Below, one piece after another: positions 18,391-54,415 of a stretch of 64,000 nucleotides of DNA. The notes under the pieces were generated by a model. That model was not told the origin of the DNA. It saw nothing but the letters and a program-made list of their open reading frames with translations, and did no database searches. The stretch lies in the IMG/VR virus record IMGVR_UViG_3300042541_001760, positions 124,001-188,000 of that record; one strand, given 5' to 3'. The translations under genes and the position numbers were made by a program. Position 1 is the first letter of the stretch. Every line of letters begins with the position of its first letter.

Positions 18391-18924
18391 TTATTTAATG
18401 AATTTAGATAGTTCAGATTTATTTGAATCAAATTCCTCCTGAGTAATTAAACCAAGTTCAAGTTTATCTTTACATTTCTTTAATTCGGATAAGGCCTCAT
18501 CACTTGTCATACCTAACCCTTTAACTTCACCTGTTTCAATTGCATTCTCTAATAGTATTCTATAACTACCTGACAAAGCGTAAGGACCTTTACAAACTAA
18601 TAAGGCCGAGAAACCGACTCTCCTACTCCCACTATATGTAATACTTTTAATCTCCACAATTTGTCCCATTGCGGTAGCACCAGCATTTGTCATAGGGGTT
18701 AAAACATTATCACCAATAAAGATAAAGGCAAAAGTTTTATTTGATGAGGTAACCCCTATTTTGATTTTATCACCCACTTTATATAGATAACCATCCTTAC
18801 TTTCATACTGTTCAAATTTCCATTGAGATGGTTTTTCTGATAAGTCACTATATTTAAGGGTTTCTTGTCCAAAAGACACAATAGTTGAGTACATCATTAG
18901 TACCATCATCATAAGTTGTTTCAT
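18391..18924 (-). CDS. Secreted protein with C-terminal SHOCT-like domain
   Basis: Signal peptide ending SFGQ; DEALSELKKCKDKLELGLITQEEFD; TAnnTTTG promoter upstream (~18990). Confidence 0.65.
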   Translation of the reverse strand: MKQLMMMVLMMYSTIVSFGQETLKYSDLSEKPSQWKFEQYESKDGYLYKVGDKIKIGVTSSNKTFAFIFIGDNVLTPMTNAGATAMGQIVEIKSITYSGSRRVGFSALLVCKGPYALSGSYRILLENAIETGEVKGLGMTSDEALSELKKCKDKLELGLITQEEFDSNKSELSKFIK

Positions 18925-19189
18925 AAAAATACATTAATATAATTTCCTACTCTAATCGGTTTTCGGATACCCCGTTCTTATAACACAACAAAGATATAAT
19001 AATAATCCCATAAAATCCAAAAATTTTTCAGAAATTTTATTTCGTATATTAGGTCTTAAATTAAAACGGGGGTCAATGTTATGGAACGAAGGTAATTGTC
19101 ACCCTCATTCAGAATACAAAGGCAAATATTACCCTTAATAAAAAACCCCTCTTTATGGGAGGGGATTAGTATTGATGTTATTAAAAACC

Positions 19190-19591: not shown

Positions 19592-19942
19592 TATCACCCC
19601 ATACAGGGGGGTAGTACCACACCCATACCACCCCCTCATTACTGTTTTACCCCTCCCACCATAATATGATTCATCTAATGTGACCTATTAAAGTTCTGAC
19701 ATAACCTAATTAAGTTATCAACTGACGATGTGACATTGTTAATAACTATCGCTTGTATATGTGGGGGAAAAGAATTATCTTTGTAGTGTGATAATGATTA
19801 AGTTCAGTCAAGGGTTGGGGACGTTGATGTTCGCTGGAGCGTATACTCCGTTACGTACTAACGTAAGTAACGTCGGTAGATGTTACGCTCCAACCTGCTT
19901 TATTATATATAATAAATCCCCATCGTTTATTATGTACGGATG

Positions 19943-19974
19943 TTTGGCAGTGTCAGATATTAATTGTATCTTTG
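19943..19974 (+). promoter_or_regulatory. Bacteroidota-type promoter driving a tRNA-like RNA
   Basis: TTTG-N20-TATCTTTG ending 7 nt before the tRNA-like 5' end. Confidence 0.7.
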
Positions 19975-19981
19975 TGGTGTT

Positions 19982-20050
19982 AGTTAGGTGGTGTAATTGG
20001 TAACACGGGAACTTATAGGCCAATCACAGGTTCGAGTCCTGTTCTGACTA
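19982..20050 (+). ncRNA. tRNA-like RNA with shortened, non-pairing anticodon region
   Basis: Acceptor AGTTAGG/TCTGACT plus A; D arm GTGT-AATTGGTA-ACAC; T arm ACAGG-TTCGAGT-CCTGT; only 19 nt between D and T arms, no anticodon stem; no encoded CCA. Confidence 0.7.
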
Positions 20051-23945: not shown

Positions 23946-24071
23946 TAGTCAGGACAGGATTCGAACCTGCATCGCTTCCGCACTTCTGCGTTGATACCCT
24001 TTTTATTTAATGTGAGGGTTGGAAATACCTCATTACAGTTTTTCATCGTCTTCCATTTCCGCCACCTGACT
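23946..24071 (-). ncRNA. tRNA-like RNA (Leu-type D arm) with 76 nt expanded anticodon/variable region
   Basis: AGTCAGG/CCTGACT plus A; TG-GCGG-AAATGGAA-GACG; T arm GCAGG-TTCGAAT-CCTGT; the insert has hairpins TGAGG/CCTCA and CGCA-GAAG-TGCG but no canonical 7 nt anticodon loop. Confidence 0.75.
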
Positions 24072-24450: not shown

Positions 24451-24482
24451 CAAAGATACAATTAATATTTGAATCCACCAAA
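24451..24482 (-). promoter_or_regulatory. Bacteroidota-type promoter (repeat copy)
   Basis: TTTG-N20-TATCTTTG; near-identical to 19943-19974 and 24964-24995. Confidence 0.7.
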
Positions 24483-24501
24483 CATCCGTATAAAATAAAT
24501 G

Positions 24502-24716
24502 TAGTCAGGACAGGATTCGAACCTGCATGAGATGAGGAGTCAACTTAACTATCTCCTACGCTTCCCTTGTATATTTCTACAGACATTACTGTCGGGCATC
24601 TCTAACCTAGATAATGTAGCGTCTACCAAGAAATAACATTGACCTCGTTGTGGATTTTCACCACTATTAGTTAATCTTCCGATACGAGGTTAATTAAATC
24701 ATTCCGCCACCTGACT
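24502..24716 (-). ncRNA. tRNA-like RNA with 73 nt insertion in the D loop and 92 nt anticodon/variable region
   Basis: Same acceptor and T arms as 23946-24071; GGCGGAA and TGGTAGACGC halves of the D arm are separated by a structured insert (AACCTCGT/ACGAGGT stem, GGAA tetraloop). Confidence 0.7.
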
Positions 24717-24963: not shown

Positions 24964-24995
24964 CAAAGATACAATTAATATTTGAATCTGCCAAA
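24964..24995 (-). promoter_or_regulatory. Bacteroidota-type promoter (repeat copy)
   Basis: TTTG-N20-TATCTTTG. Confidence 0.7.
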
Positions 24996-25409
24996 CACCA
25001 AAGTTTTAATATCCCGTCTCTTTTCCCCAACTTTCTGAATTATTTATTTCTTTTCCTATCATCGCAGCCATATATCCCTTGATATAGAAATACTTATCAT
25101 TCTCTGTACATCCATCACATCCCTCCCAAGAATTTTCCGCCATCTTTTGGTAATCGGATGTCTTTACTTCTTTATCACTTTTGTCAGGTATTATGTTTAC
25201 TAACTTAGCATAGGGAACTCTATTACTTAGGTATTCCTTAACTACCACATCTACATGGATGATTTCAAACTCAATATCTCTTGTGAATGATGAAGTGAAG
25301 ACTGACTTCACCATTTCCACATCTTTTGGATGGAGTGGTAATCTACTATTATTAAATGCTTGGGGGTAATCCACCATCCATCCTTCTTCTGTTTTATGTA
25401 AAAATCCTT

Positions 25410-52297: not shown

Positions 52298-52732
52298 TTA
52301 ATCCACCAAATTTAATTGTCGGGTAATATCTCTCTCCTTGATTGTGTTGCGTTTATCATACTCTTTCTTACCCTTACAAACAGAAATCTCCATCTTTAAG
52401 AATCCCCTCTCATTTAAGTATAATCTTGTTGGTATGATTGTTACCCCCTTTATAAGTTCTTTCTTTAACTTATCCAACTCTTTGCGTTTGAGTAATAACT
52501 TACGATGTCTTAACGGATCGTGTGAGTATGCGGTGTTGTTACCGGGTATGTTCATCCCAACAACGAATAGTTCATCACCTTGAAACATACAATAACTATC
52601 TACGAGTGATACCTGACCCGCTCTGATTGCCTTTACTTCGGATCCCACCAATTGGATACCCGCATGTTCCTGACGAAGAAAGTGATAATCAAATTTTGCC
52701 TTTTTATTAACAATATTTATTGTCTGTTTCAT
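52298..52732 (-). CDS. smpB: SsrA-binding protein SmpB
   Basis: NKKAKFDY...AGIQLVGSEVKAIR...HDPLRHRKLLL..KEL..L...G.TIIP..LY...KGKKEYDKR..IKERD. Confidence 0.95.
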   Translation of the reverse strand: MKQTINIVNKKAKFDYHFLRQEHAGIQLVGSEVKAIRAGQVSLVDSYCMFQGDELFVVGMNIPGNNTAYSHDPLRHRKLLLKRKELDKLKKELIKGVTIIPTRLYLNERGFLKMEISVCKGKKEYDKRNTIKERDITRQLNLVD

Positions 52733-52929
52733 TCTCCAAATTTACGAAAAATATTTGAAATAAAAAACCCCACCTTACAAAAACTAATCTGATGGCGGGG
52801 TTTAAAGTATAAACCAACTAAATGTGGGGGGTTTGTTGGCTAATATTATGATAAGATAAATATATGATAATTATGTAAAAGTCAACAATAACTCAAATAA
52901 ATTTAATTCTACCTTTGGGGGCTTGTGAT

Positions 52930-53624
52930 TTATCGTCCTTTGGGATAAACAAAATCACCTTCAAATTTTTTTACTCTTAGATTAAACAGATCCATTTTGT
53001 AAGTTTCTTTCAACCACACAGGAATAATTGATTTAACATCATCATTATGAAGGTGAAAAAAGTTTACTAAATGTGACCAAATATAATTATCACTAACAAA
53101 AACTTCCCAATAAGGTGTGGAAAATTGTAATAAAATTTGATTTTCGGAATCAATAAAAAATGTGTCGTTGGGATAATCCTCGTGTTTCCTTAGCGTTAAA
53201 TCACCATAGTGTTTATCTAACCACTTGATAACTACTCTTTCTAACTGATGTTTATTTACCTGTATGTCCATAATATATAAATACCTTAATCATTTTCCAA
53301 CCATGCGGTTGGAATGTCCTTGATACTTACAGGTCTTACTCCCTCTAAGTTGTAATCCTCCTCCATCCATACTCTCATAACTGATTGAGTGTCATCATAG
53401 TTAATGTGAAATAATGATTCAATTTTTGACCAAATTTCGTCATAATGAACATAAACATTATTATATTTTTTATCGTATTCCATCATAACATAATTGTTTG
53501 AATTTATGTAAAATACTGAGTTAGGGTCATTCTTATCTTTTTTTGGTATTAAGTTACCGTAGTATTTATTTAACCACTTGATAACTACTCTTTCTAATTG
53601 GTCTTTATTTACCTGTATGTTCAT
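52930..53624 (-). repeat. Two further MDIQVN paralogs (52930-53271, 53286-53624)
   Basis: Same N-terminal and C-terminal motifs as the 32.4-34.5 kb array. Confidence 0.9.
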
Positions 53625-54046
53625 TGTCTTACACTCAACACTTTTAATATTATCTCCTTCATTTCATTACCCAACGGACTAGGAAGATTATCCGCAGTAA
53701 AATAACCACAATCGGTATGTTCCTCACCATCTTTCGCATTATCCAAGTCAGGTGACACCTCCTCATTTACATCATATAGGAATAAACTCATTACCCCCTT
53801 TAATTTTGTGGTGTCTCTGTTATATCTCTTGATACCACCAATATAACTAAGGTCGCCCGGTGATACCTCAATCATCGTTTCTTCATATAACTCACGAACT
53901 GCGCAAGTTAATTTATCTTCATTGGGTTCTTGGTGACCACAAGGAACTGACCATTCGCCAGGTAAACTCTCATAGGCGTTTCTTTTACACAAAAGAACTT
54001 TGTCCTCAAAACGTATTAAAACACCGGAATACTGCTTATATTTCAT
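53621..54046 (-). CDS. NUDIX hydrolase
   Basis: CGHQEPNEDKLTCAVRELYEETMI nudix box. Confidence 0.85.
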   Translation of the reverse strand: MKYKQYSGVLIRFEDKVLLCKRNAYESLPGEWSVPCGHQEPNEDKLTCAVRELYEETMIEVSPGDLSYIGGIKRYNRDTTKLKGVMSLFLYDVNEEVSPDLDNAKDGEEHTDCGYFTADNLPSPLGNEMKEIILKVLSVRQ

Positions 54047-54067: not shown

Positions 54068-54415
54068 ATGATTTTAAGTATAAATAGTCAAAAGTTTAAA
54101 GTAAGAATTGTTTCATCCCCCAAAGATACAAAAAATGGTATGATGAAAAAAAAATTTAATGACGAATTTAATGGGATGTTATTTTTGATGGGTGACGGAA
54201 CTCATTCATTTTGGATGAAGAATTGTATTATACCATTGGATATCATCTATATTAAAGACAACAAGATTACAAAGATACATAACAATTGTCCTCCGTGTGA
54301 TACGGACGATTGTGACCATTATCCCGGTACAGGTAACTTAGTATTGGAATTAAAGGGTGGTACTTGTAAAGATTCTGATATATCAGTTGGTGACTCAATT
54401 AAGTTTGAGTGGTAA
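54068..54415 (+). CDS. DUF192 family protein
   Basis: GMLF...FWMKNCIIPLDIIYI...CPPC...VLELKGG...GD. Confidence 0.88.
   Translation: MILSINSQKFKVRIVSSPKDTKNGMMKKKFNDEFNGMLFLMGDGTHSFWMKNCIIPLDIIYIKDNKITKIHNNCPPCDTDDCDHYPGTGNLVLELKGGTCKDSDISVGDSIKFEW

What the first reader, a model, noticed from the sequence alone, without database searches (positions are those of the whole stretch)
52298..52732. Phage-encoded SmpB with an altered C-terminal tail and no tmRNA in the window
Seen: a clear SmpB ending DKRNTIKERDITRQLNLVD, without the terminal basic residues typical of bacterial tails. Established: SmpB binds the anticodon-less tRNA-like domain of tmRNA, and its tail enters the mRNA channel. Inference: it may support, retune or poison host trans-translation, or partner the anticodon-less tRNA-like RNAs at 19.98 and 23.9-24.7 kb. 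Those RNAs lack the G3-U70 Ala identity, so they would not be classical tmRNA.
Basis: partly seen in the sequence, partly recalled or inferred. Interest (0 to 1): 0.6.

Follow-up and report, generated by a model that had tools for sequence, protein, structure and literature searches.

The report
Phage SmpB paired with phage tmRNA
A 261-kb freshwater phage carries an intact ribosome-rescue protein (SmpB), and its partner RNA (tmRNA) sits about 104 kb away outside the window, so this is a phage-borne copy of a known bacterial rescue system rather than an orphan protein.

Summary
The ORF at 52298-52732 (-) is a bona fide SmpB: it passes both NCBIfam equivalog cut-offs, keeps 28 of 29 highly conserved positions, and has dN/dS of 0.02-0.07. 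Its tail is unusual. It keeps KGKK, DKR and the basic residues at +4, +6 and +10. It lacks the distal K/R (the E. coli R153 position) found in 85-94% of relatives. The window holds no tmRNA, but the same virus record does, about 104 kb upstream (Rfam 83 bits, G3:U70). That tmRNA encodes a 22-residue tag that is conserved as a peptide in related phages. It is unlike the 9-residue ...YALAA tags of Bacteroidota, the likely hosts. Contigs from three metatranscriptome studies lie wholly inside the tmRNA gene. All four near-complete SmpB-bearing phage genomes also have a tmRNA, and in nine related records the two genes lie 0.5-2.3 kb apart. The anticodon-less tRNA-like RNAs belong to a very widespread phage family that does not track SmpB (1 of 19 large records). 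Huge-phage SmpB and tmRNA were reported in 2020, so this is a new member of a known kind. The lineage-specific tag and a phage ClpP plus ClpA/C-like ATPase are modest extras.

The parts
52298..52732 (-). smpB coding sequence (144 aa plus TAA stop). It is the only SmpB gene in the 261-kb record. Its partner tmRNA lies outside the window at G000:C1:71764-72157 (+), about 104 kb upstream.
   Evidence: tmRNA:
52301..52357 (-). C-terminal tail from DKR to the last residue (residues 126-144). K132, R134 and R138 are kept. The distal basic pair at +13/+14 is replaced by N and L. The last residue aligns with E. coli residue 155.
   Evidence: residue roles from PMC4151336
52737..52759 (-). Promoter-like element ending in TAAATTTG (the Bacteroidota -7 type, TAnnTTTG) 4 nt before the ATG. 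It resembles the element upstream of the phage tmRNA and suggests a leaderless or nearly leaderless mRNA.
   Evidence: the Bacteroidota consensus is from my own knowledge; the TTTG-N18-21-TAnnTTTG motif occurs 37 times in the genome against 10.8 in shuffles
52758..52803 (-). G+C-rich hairpin (-18.2 kcal/mol) followed by a T run. It looks like the terminator of the upstream gene and would make smpB its own transcription unit.
   Evidence: the simple terminator scan did not list it, probably because the loop is too long

Best explanation
This is a functional, phage-encoded SmpB that works with the phage's own tmRNA as a two-part trans-translation module in a Bacteroidota host.

Shown:
- The gene is an intact SmpB under strong purifying selection.
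- A full-length tmRNA with the alanine identity pair G3:U70 and a conserved tag frame lies in the same genome.
- RNA-library contigs match only the tmRNA gene body.
- smpB and ssrA are co-inherited, and usually adjacent, in related phages.

Inferred:
- Host AlaRS charges the phage tmRNA, since no phage AlaRS was found.
- Phage SmpB binds the tRNA-like domain of the tmRNA and EF-Tu delivers the complex to ribosomes stalled at mRNA 3' ends.
- The SmpB tail (KGKK, Tyr at the E. coli H136 position, DKR, K132, R134, R138) probes the empty mRNA channel.
- Translation resumes at GGC and adds Ala plus the 22-residue tag GNVINKLSAVGLVRTSETVAVA.
- The purpose is probably to keep ribosomes available during infection, when mRNA decay or RNA-cleaving defences create non-stop messages.
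- The less basic distal tail is a derived, conserved fine-tuning of channel binding, not a loss of function.
For: - SmpB identity.
- 28 of 29 positions that are at least 90% conserved in 80 bacterial SmpBs are kept.
- dN/dS is 0.02-0.07 against three close relatives. The odd tail is identical in a relative that is only 76% identical overall.
- tmRNA: Rfam 83.2 bits (gathering 47) over the full model, acceptor GGGUCCA/UGGAUCC-A with G3:U70, and an intact T arm.
- Tag frame: homologous 21-22-aa tags in 10 related phage tmRNAs, with synonymous codon changes. Of 7 strain variants inside the frame, 5 are synonymous third-position changes and 2 are conservative.
- Expression: contigs from three metatranscriptome studies lie at L001:1517-1869, inside the gene (1501-1894). 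A DNA contig runs into the flank.
- Co-occurrence: the 4 SmpB-bearing records that are at least 89% complete all have a tmRNA. The two genes are 0.5-2.3 kb apart in 9 related records.
- Both genes have similar Bacteroidota-type promoter elements.
- Phylogeny: SmpB sits in a clade of 72 viral and metagenomic sequences beside Bacteroidota, and the relatives checked have phage-like gene contexts.
Against: - No binding, charging or tagging was tested.
- The tail lacks the R153-equivalent arginine, whose mutation impairs tagging in E. coli (PMC4151336), and has Ile at the W147 position.
- smpB and ssrA are 104 kb apart here, unlike most relatives.
- The tmRNA encodes CCU rather than CCA at its 3' end, and ARAGORN does not call it.
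- RNA-library contigs cannot exclude DNA carry-over and cannot show RNA ends.
- Co-occurrence is among related phages, so the records are not independent.
Confidence: 0.8

Rival explanations
1. The phage SmpB mainly serves, boosts or captures the host tmRNA, and the phage tmRNA is incidental or works with host SmpB.
For: Many phages carry a tmRNA without SmpB: 7 of the 8 tmRNA-bearing large records, and the mycobacteriophages listed in PMC4131195. Cross-use of host SmpB is therefore evidently workable. The SmpB core residues are generic.
Against: Every near-complete SmpB-bearing phage also has a tmRNA, and the two genes are usually adjacent. SmpB and the tag diverge in parallel: the basal G003 SmpB goes with the divergent G003 tag.
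Confidence: 0.1
2. The SmpB is a dominant-negative or decoy that blocks host trans-translation through its altered tail.
For: The R153-equivalent basic residue is lost and there is no Trp at the W147 position. In E. coli, tail mutants still bind tmRNA and ribosomes but fail to tag (PMC4151336).
Against: The elements reported as most critical are all kept: KGKK, an aromatic residue at the H136 position, DKR, K143 and R145 equivalents. W147 is not conserved in Bacteroidota SmpBs either. T. thermophilus SmpB has an equally short tail. The phage keeps a tmRNA whose tag frame is under peptide-level selection, which would be pointless if tagging were blocked.
Confidence: 0.05
3. The SmpB partners the anticodon-less tRNA-like RNAs at 19982-20050, 23946-24071 and 24502-24716.
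For: These RNAs keep acceptor and T arms but lack a normal anticodon arm. A domain-only tmRNA fragment in phage DS6A has been proposed to titrate SmpB (PMC4131195). The family is present in 4 of 5 related SmpB-bearing phage records.
Against: The family is very widespread (at least 120 IMG/VR contigs), and only 1 of 19 large carriers has SmpB. The RNAs have a tRNA-Leu-like D stem, no G3:U70 and no tag frame. A canonical partner tmRNA exists.
Confidence: 0.03
4. The gene is host DNA mis-assembled into a viral contig, or a recently captured passenger gene with no role.
For: Some GenBank temperate-phage records carry smpB at a record end, probably as host flank.
Against: The gene lies deep inside a 261-kb, 32% G+C virus record among phage-type genes. 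It belongs to a large clade with no genome-derived bacterial member, and the best bacterial identity is 57%. It has a phage-type promoter element, dN/dS of 0.02-0.07, and the record's tmRNA locus is found in lake metagenomes from at least 14 studies.
Confidence: 0.02

Closest known systems
Bacterial SmpB (TIGR00086 / PF01668), closest to Bacteroidota SmpBs
   Same: Full-length match above the equivalog cut-offs. It keeps 28 of 29 conserved positions, KGKK, DKR and the tail basic residues at +4, +6 and +10.
   Different: It is encoded by a phage. The best genome-derived bacterial identity is 57%. The distal tail has lost the +13/+14 basic residues and the protein ends at the E. coli 155 position.
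tmRNA and SmpB of huge phages (Al-Shayeb et al. 2020, PMC7162821), including Lak megaphages and the 735-kb phage
   Same: A large phage of a Bacteroidota-type host carries both rescue components. tblastn finds SmpB in the Lak phages and in LR756501 at 44-46% identity. A 69%-identical relative lies on a 305-kb NCBI record.
   Different: This is a different, freshwater lineage. The tmRNA here and most of its relatives are missed by ARAGORN, the tool used in that study. The lineage-specific 21-22-aa tag and the tail variant are not mentioned in the passages of that paper on tmRNA and SmpB.
Phage tmRNAs without SmpB (mycobacteriophage Bxz1 group, Bacillus phage G; Hudson et al. 2014, PMC4131195)
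   Same: A phage-encoded ssrA.
   Different: Those phages rely on host SmpB, and no phage smpB was known in 2014. Here both parts are phage-encoded.
Thermus thermophilus SmpB (PDB 1j1h, 4v8q)
   Same: It is the same length (144 aa) and the tail ends in the same register to within one residue. In that structure the tail forms a helix in the mRNA channel (PMC4131195).
   Different: The aligned Thermus tail has more basic residues than the query tail.

Membership tests
SmpB (SsrA-binding protein) | Full-length match to the curated equivalog models above their cut-offs | tested here: met
   TIGR00086 scores 160.2 (cut-off 119.1), NF003843 161.1 (130) and Pfam 159.2 (27)
SmpB (SsrA-binding protein) | Conserved core residues of the beta-barrel and RNA-binding surface | tested here: met
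   28 of 29 columns that are at least 90% identical in 80 bacterial SmpBs are kept; the one change is S to A at residue 35
SmpB (SsrA-binding protein) | Proximal tail motifs: KGKK, an aromatic or His residue at the E. coli 136 position, DKR, and the K143 and R145 equivalents | tested here: met
   K120-G-K-K123, Y125, D126-K-R128, K132 and R134; residue roles from PMC4151336
SmpB (SsrA-binding protein) | Distal tail basic residue (E. coli R153 equivalent) | tested here: not met
   L142 where 85% of bacterial and 94% of metagenomic relatives have K/R. This is a clade-specific, conserved change. It is not a universal family requirement, since 15% of the bacterial sample also lack it.
SmpB (SsrA-binding protein) | A cognate tmRNA in the same genome | tested here: met
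   RF00023 scores 83.2 bits at G000:C1:71764-72157
SmpB (SsrA-binding protein) | [quoted passage not shown] | not testable with these tools
   Needs biochemistry or genetics
tmRNA (RF00023), the partner RNA | Covariance-model match over the gathering score, spanning both ends | tested here: met
   83.2 bits against 47, model positions 1-374. ARAGORN does not call it.
tmRNA (RF00023), the partner RNA | Alanine identity: G3:U70 in a 7-bp acceptor stem with discriminator A | tested here: met
   5' GGGUCCA pairs with 3' UGGAUCC, followed by A. The 3' end is encoded as CCU, not CCA.
tmRNA (RF00023), the partner RNA | Internal tag reading frame ending in non-polar residues and a stop, conserved as a peptide | tested here: met
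   A 22-codon frame ending ...VAVA then TAA. Homologous tags occur in 10 phage tmRNAs. 5 of 7 strain variants are synonymous.
tmRNA (RF00023), the partner RNA | Expressed as a discrete stable RNA | tested here: inconclusive
   Contigs from three metatranscriptome studies lie only inside the gene. Contigs cannot show RNA ends or strand, and DNA carry-over is not excluded.

The most novel reading that the evidence does not exclude
This freshwater jumbo-phage lineage may run a private tag-and-degrade pathway. The parts would be its own tmRNA with a lineage-specific 21-22-residue tag unlike the host ...YALAA degron, its own SmpB, a bona fide ClpP, and in some members a ClpA/C-like unfoldase with a VGF ClpP-docking loop encoded a few kb from the tmRNA gene. 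Products of stalled ribosomes would then be routed to phage-controlled proteolysis (or spared from host proteolysis) independently of the host system. The less basic SmpB tail might tune which ribosomes are rescued.
Probability: 0.25. Interest if true: 0.6.

Novelty: new member of a known kind. Interest (0 to 1): 0.35.

Why it matters
The result corrects a window-edge artefact: the SmpB is not an orphan, because the phage carries its own tmRNA. Phage-borne trans-translation components are known only from genome surveys and have not been tested. This lineage offers a clean case for testing. Both parts are intact, the RNA shows signs of expression in lakes, and the tag is distinct enough from the host tag to be tracked by mass spectrometry. 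It also gives a practical warning. ARAGORN missed 9 of the 11 tmRNAs of this phage group, so surveys that rely on it undercount phage tmRNAs.

Tried and rejected
- ARAGORN on the window, on the whole genome and on the tmRNA locus found no tmRNA. Only the Rfam model found it.
- Megablast of the 6 kb around smpB against GenBank phages found nothing.
- An exact 29-mer from the tag region found nothing in IMG/VR.
- The sigma-70 promoter and simple terminator scan was uninformative: 13 sites against 9.0 expected, and no terminators. Bacteroidota-type motifs were searched by script instead.
- No S41 tail-specific protease, RF-1/ArfB-type factor or AlaRS was found in the record, which is 89% complete.
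- I considered that RNase P cutting at the tRNA-like elements could create non-stop mRNAs for the tmRNA system. The stop codon overlaps the element at only one of the two ORF-adjacent copies, so I dropped this.
- I considered the ClpP to be a prohead protease. It scores 237 bits against a bacterial ClpP equivalog but 65 bits against the head-maturation model, and it lies between a helicase and an exonuclease. It is more likely a true ClpP.
- No structure prediction or complex prediction was run. Sequence evidence was already decisive, and the complex tool does not take RNA.

Full report
**What is at the coordinates.** The window holds a 144-codon ORF at 52298..52732 on the minus strand, ending ...DKRNTIKERDITRQLNLVD.
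- It matches Pfam SmpB at 159 bits and both NCBIfam SmpB equivalogs at 160-161 bits, above cut-offs of 119 and 130.
- It matches solved SmpB structures down to E = 4e-36.
- It keeps 28 of the 29 positions that are at least 90% identical in 80 bacterial SmpBs.
- Against three close relatives from IMG/VR, dN/dS is 0.02-0.07.
- It is therefore an intact SmpB gene under purifying selection.

**The tail.**
- The alignment to full-length E. coli SmpB puts query residue n at E. coli n+11 in the tail.
- KGKK, Tyr at the His136 position, DKR and the K143 and R145 equivalents are present.
- The W147 position is Ile and the R153 position is Leu. The protein ends at the E. coli 155 position.
- Miller and Buskirk (PMC4151336) report that H136Y is nearly neutral. 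They also report that DKR, K143, R145, R153 and W147 all contribute to tagging.
- After DKR the tail is 16 aa with 3 K/R and none in the last six residues. In 80 bacterial SmpBs the median is 19 aa and 7 K/R, and none lacks K/R in the last six.
- Position by position, the query keeps the conserved basic residues at +4, +6 and +10 but lacks those at +13/+14. Net charge is unchanged, because neighbouring acidic residues are also replaced.
- Only the query's own subclade shares this tail, including a relative that is 76% identical overall.
- That subclade is nested inside a clade with the ordinary ...DRDMKRDLK type of tail. The change is therefore derived and conserved, not decay.
- The tail is not truncated. 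T. thermophilus SmpB is also 144 aa and ends in the same register to within one residue. In the ribosome structure of that protein the tail forms a helix in the mRNA channel (PMC4131195).

**The missing tmRNA.**
- Neither ARAGORN nor Rfam finds a tmRNA in the window.
- The window is positions 124001-188000 of a 261,052-bp IMG/VR virus record (89% complete, 32% G+C).
- Rfam's tmRNA model matches that record at 71764-72157 (+) with 83.2 bits (gathering 47) over the whole model.
- The acceptor stem GGGUCCA/UGGAUCC has G3:U70 and discriminator A, and the T arm is canonical. The 3' end is encoded as CCU.
- The Rfam alignment places the resume codon at GGC. This gives a 22-codon frame, GNVINKLSAVGLVRTSETVAVA, followed by TAA.
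- A Bacteroidota-type promoter (TTTG, 19 nt, TAnnTTTG) ends 28 nt upstream of the mature 5' end. A similar element ends 4 nt before the smpB start codon, behind a terminator-like hairpin. The consensus itself is from my own knowledge.

**Is the tag frame real?**
- ARAGORN calls the tmRNA of a related phage with the tag GNILDKMSAIGLIRAEEVVVA.
- Reading the same frame in nine further related phage tmRNAs gives homologous 21-22-aa tags.
- The differences between them are conservative, and the codon changes include synonymous ones for Gly, Leu, Arg and Ala.
- One basal relative has a different 25-aa tag ending VAA.
- Strain variants seen in sequencing runs add support. Of seven differences inside the frame, five are synonymous third-position changes and two are conservative (V to L, S to T).
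- By contrast, tmRNAs of four Bacteroidota genomes whose SmpBs are among the closest bacterial relatives score 126-153 bits. ARAGORN called three of them, with 9-aa tags ending YALAA.

**Expression.**
- The tmRNA locus occurs in lake-water metagenomes of at least 14 studies and, in part, in six metatranscriptome runs.
- Contigs from three RNA studies lie at L001:1517-1869, wholly inside the gene (1501-1894), at 97-99% identity.
- A DNA contig extends into the upstream flank.
- This fits a discrete, abundant RNA. Contigs cannot show ends or strand, and DNA carry-over is not excluded.

**Relatives and co-occurrence.**
- SmpB relatives occur in 21 IMG/VR contigs and in many metagenomic proteins at 58-97% identity.
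- The closest genome-derived bacterial SmpBs are from Bacteroidota, at 57% identity or less.
- In a maximum-likelihood tree the query lies in a clade of 72 viral and metagenomic sequences with no bacterial-genome member, beside Bacteroidota (SH-aLRT 90).
- Three metagenomic members were checked and all have phage-like contexts: thymidylate synthase, homing endonucleases, NAD ligase, NUDIX and many small ORFs. One lies on a 305-kb NCBI record.
- All four SmpB-bearing records that are at least 89% complete also have a tmRNA: G000, G003, G004 and G032. G004 scores 45.6 bits, just under the cut-off of 47.
- In nine related records the tmRNA lies 0.5-2.3 kb from smpB. In the query the genes are 104 kb apart and in G003 they are 91 kb apart.
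- These phages are related to one another, so the counts are not independent events.

**The tRNA-like RNAs.**
- The window holds three copies: 19982-20050 (+), 23946-24071 (-) and 24502-24716 (-).
- They share an acceptor stem (AGUCAGG or AGUUAGG), a canonical T arm and, in part, a tRNA-Leu-like D arm. Their centres are 18 to about 165 nt long, and they have no G3:U70.
- Their 3' 24-mer occurs exactly in at least 120 IMG/VR contigs, often in several copies.
- I recovered 133 elements, 129 of them distinct, 54-322 nt long. ARAGORN calls only 29 of the 129, with inconsistent anticodons.
- Of 19 large records that carry the 24-mer, only one has SmpB (1 of the 7 that are at least 90% complete). 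Eight have a tmRNA over the cut-off.
- The family therefore does not track SmpB. With a canonical tmRNA present, there is no reason to make these RNAs the partner. Their function remains open.

**Mechanism.**
- The best-supported reading is a phage-borne trans-translation pair.
- Host AlaRS would charge the phage tmRNA, since no phage AlaRS was found.
- Phage SmpB would bind its tRNA-like domain and license entry into ribosomes with an empty mRNA channel.
- The nascent chain would receive Ala plus the 22-residue tag.
- These steps are inferred from established knowledge of the system (PMC4151336, PMC4131195) and were not tested here.
- The likely benefit is keeping ribosomes free while messages are being degraded during infection.

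**An extra observation.**
- The phage also encodes a bona fide ClpP. It scores 237 bits against a bacterial ClpP equivalog but only 65 bits against the head-maturation model. The Ser, His and Asp motifs are present, and the gene lies between a helicase and an exonuclease.
- It also encodes a 680-aa two-ring ClpA/C-like ATPase without an N-domain. A VGF loop sits at the place of the ClpA IGL loop. The gene is 2.8 kb upstream of the tmRNA. The identification of that loop rests on my own knowledge.
- High-scoring ClpP (178-192 bits) is present in all 4 SmpB-bearing near-complete phages and in none of 9 SmpB-less ones.
- The ATPase is found in G000, in G004 (about 6.5 kb from its tmRNA) and in G042 (1.3 kb from its tmRNA).
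- This suggests, but does not show, a phage-controlled fate for tagged proteins.

**Known or new.**
- Al-Shayeb et al. 2020 (PMC7162821) already reported tmRNAs and SmpB in huge phages.
- SmpB is also detectable in Lak megaphages and in the 735-kb phage.
- PHROGs holds the family as phrog_6791, labelled 'unknown function'.
- Hudson et al. 2014 listed phage tmRNAs but knew of no phage smpB.
- I found no paper on this lineage's tag, on the tail variant or on a tmRNA-Clp link in phages.
- The finding is therefore a new member of a known kind, with modest lineage-specific features.

Noticed in passing
window 19982-20050 (+), 23946-24071 (-), 24502-24716 (-): A family of tRNA-Leu-derived RNAs with constant acceptor, D and T arms and a hypervariable centre. 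The 3' 24-mer occurs exactly in at least 120 IMG/VR contigs. I recovered 133 elements (129 distinct, 54-322 nt), and ARAGORN calls only 29 of the 129, with inconsistent anticodons. The function is unknown and the family deserves its own study.
   Followed up: partly
G000:C1:66919-68961 (+) = L257:313-2355, and G000:C1:252721-253398 (-) = L122:1486-2163 (both outside the window): The phage encodes a ClpA/C-like 680-aa ATPase with a VGF loop and no N-domain, 2.8 kb upstream of the tmRNA gene. It also encodes a bona fide ClpP in a replication-gene neighbourhood. High-scoring ClpP co-occurs with SmpB in 4 of 4 near-complete SmpB-bearing phages against 0 of 9 without SmpB. These phages are related, so the counts are not independent.
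   Followed up: partly
window 19942-19974 (+), 24451-24483 (-), 24964-24996 (-); genome-wide: A strong repeated promoter-like element, GTTTGG..ATATTAATTGTATCTTTG, of the Bacteroidota type (TTTG, about 19-20 nt, TAnnTTTG). The general motif occurs 37 times in the genome against 10.8 in shuffles. This supports a Bacteroidota host.
   Followed up: partly
L001, L025, L026, L129, L131-L135: ARAGORN fails to of the 11 tmRNAs of this phage group that Rfam detects at 46-85 bits. ARAGORN-based surveys of phage tmRNA will therefore undercount.
   Followed up: yes
window 52930-53271 (-) and 53286-53624 (-): Two tandem paralogous ORFs (113 and 112 aa, both starting M[DN]IQVNK.QLERVVIKWL) lie directly upstream of smpB. 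They have no Pfam match.
   Followed up: no
window 18944-18976 (-): An Rfam DUF805b cis-regulatory RNA motif (39.3 bits, gathering 35.6) lies just upstream of a 177-aa ORF at 18391-18924 (-).
   Followed up: no
window 53621-54046 (-), 54068-54415 (+): A NUDIX hydrolase and a DUF192 protein lie next to the smpB region. NUDIX also lies near smpB in related phage contigs.
   Followed up: no
G000:C1:78390-87350 (-), outside the window: A cluster of 7 canonical tRNA genes (Met x2, Tyr, Cys, Thr, Arg, Glu) lies 6-15 kb downstream of the tmRNA. There is also a weak tRNA-like hit at 84645-84728 whose 3' end resembles the tRNA-like family.
   Followed up: no
G034, G037, G038, G041, G042, G044, G045 (IMG/VR records reached through L178, L191, L196, L205, L206, L213, L215): Seven large phage records carry a tmRNA over the Rfam cut-off but no detectable SmpB. 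Phage tmRNA without phage SmpB therefore seems commoner than the pair.
   Followed up: no
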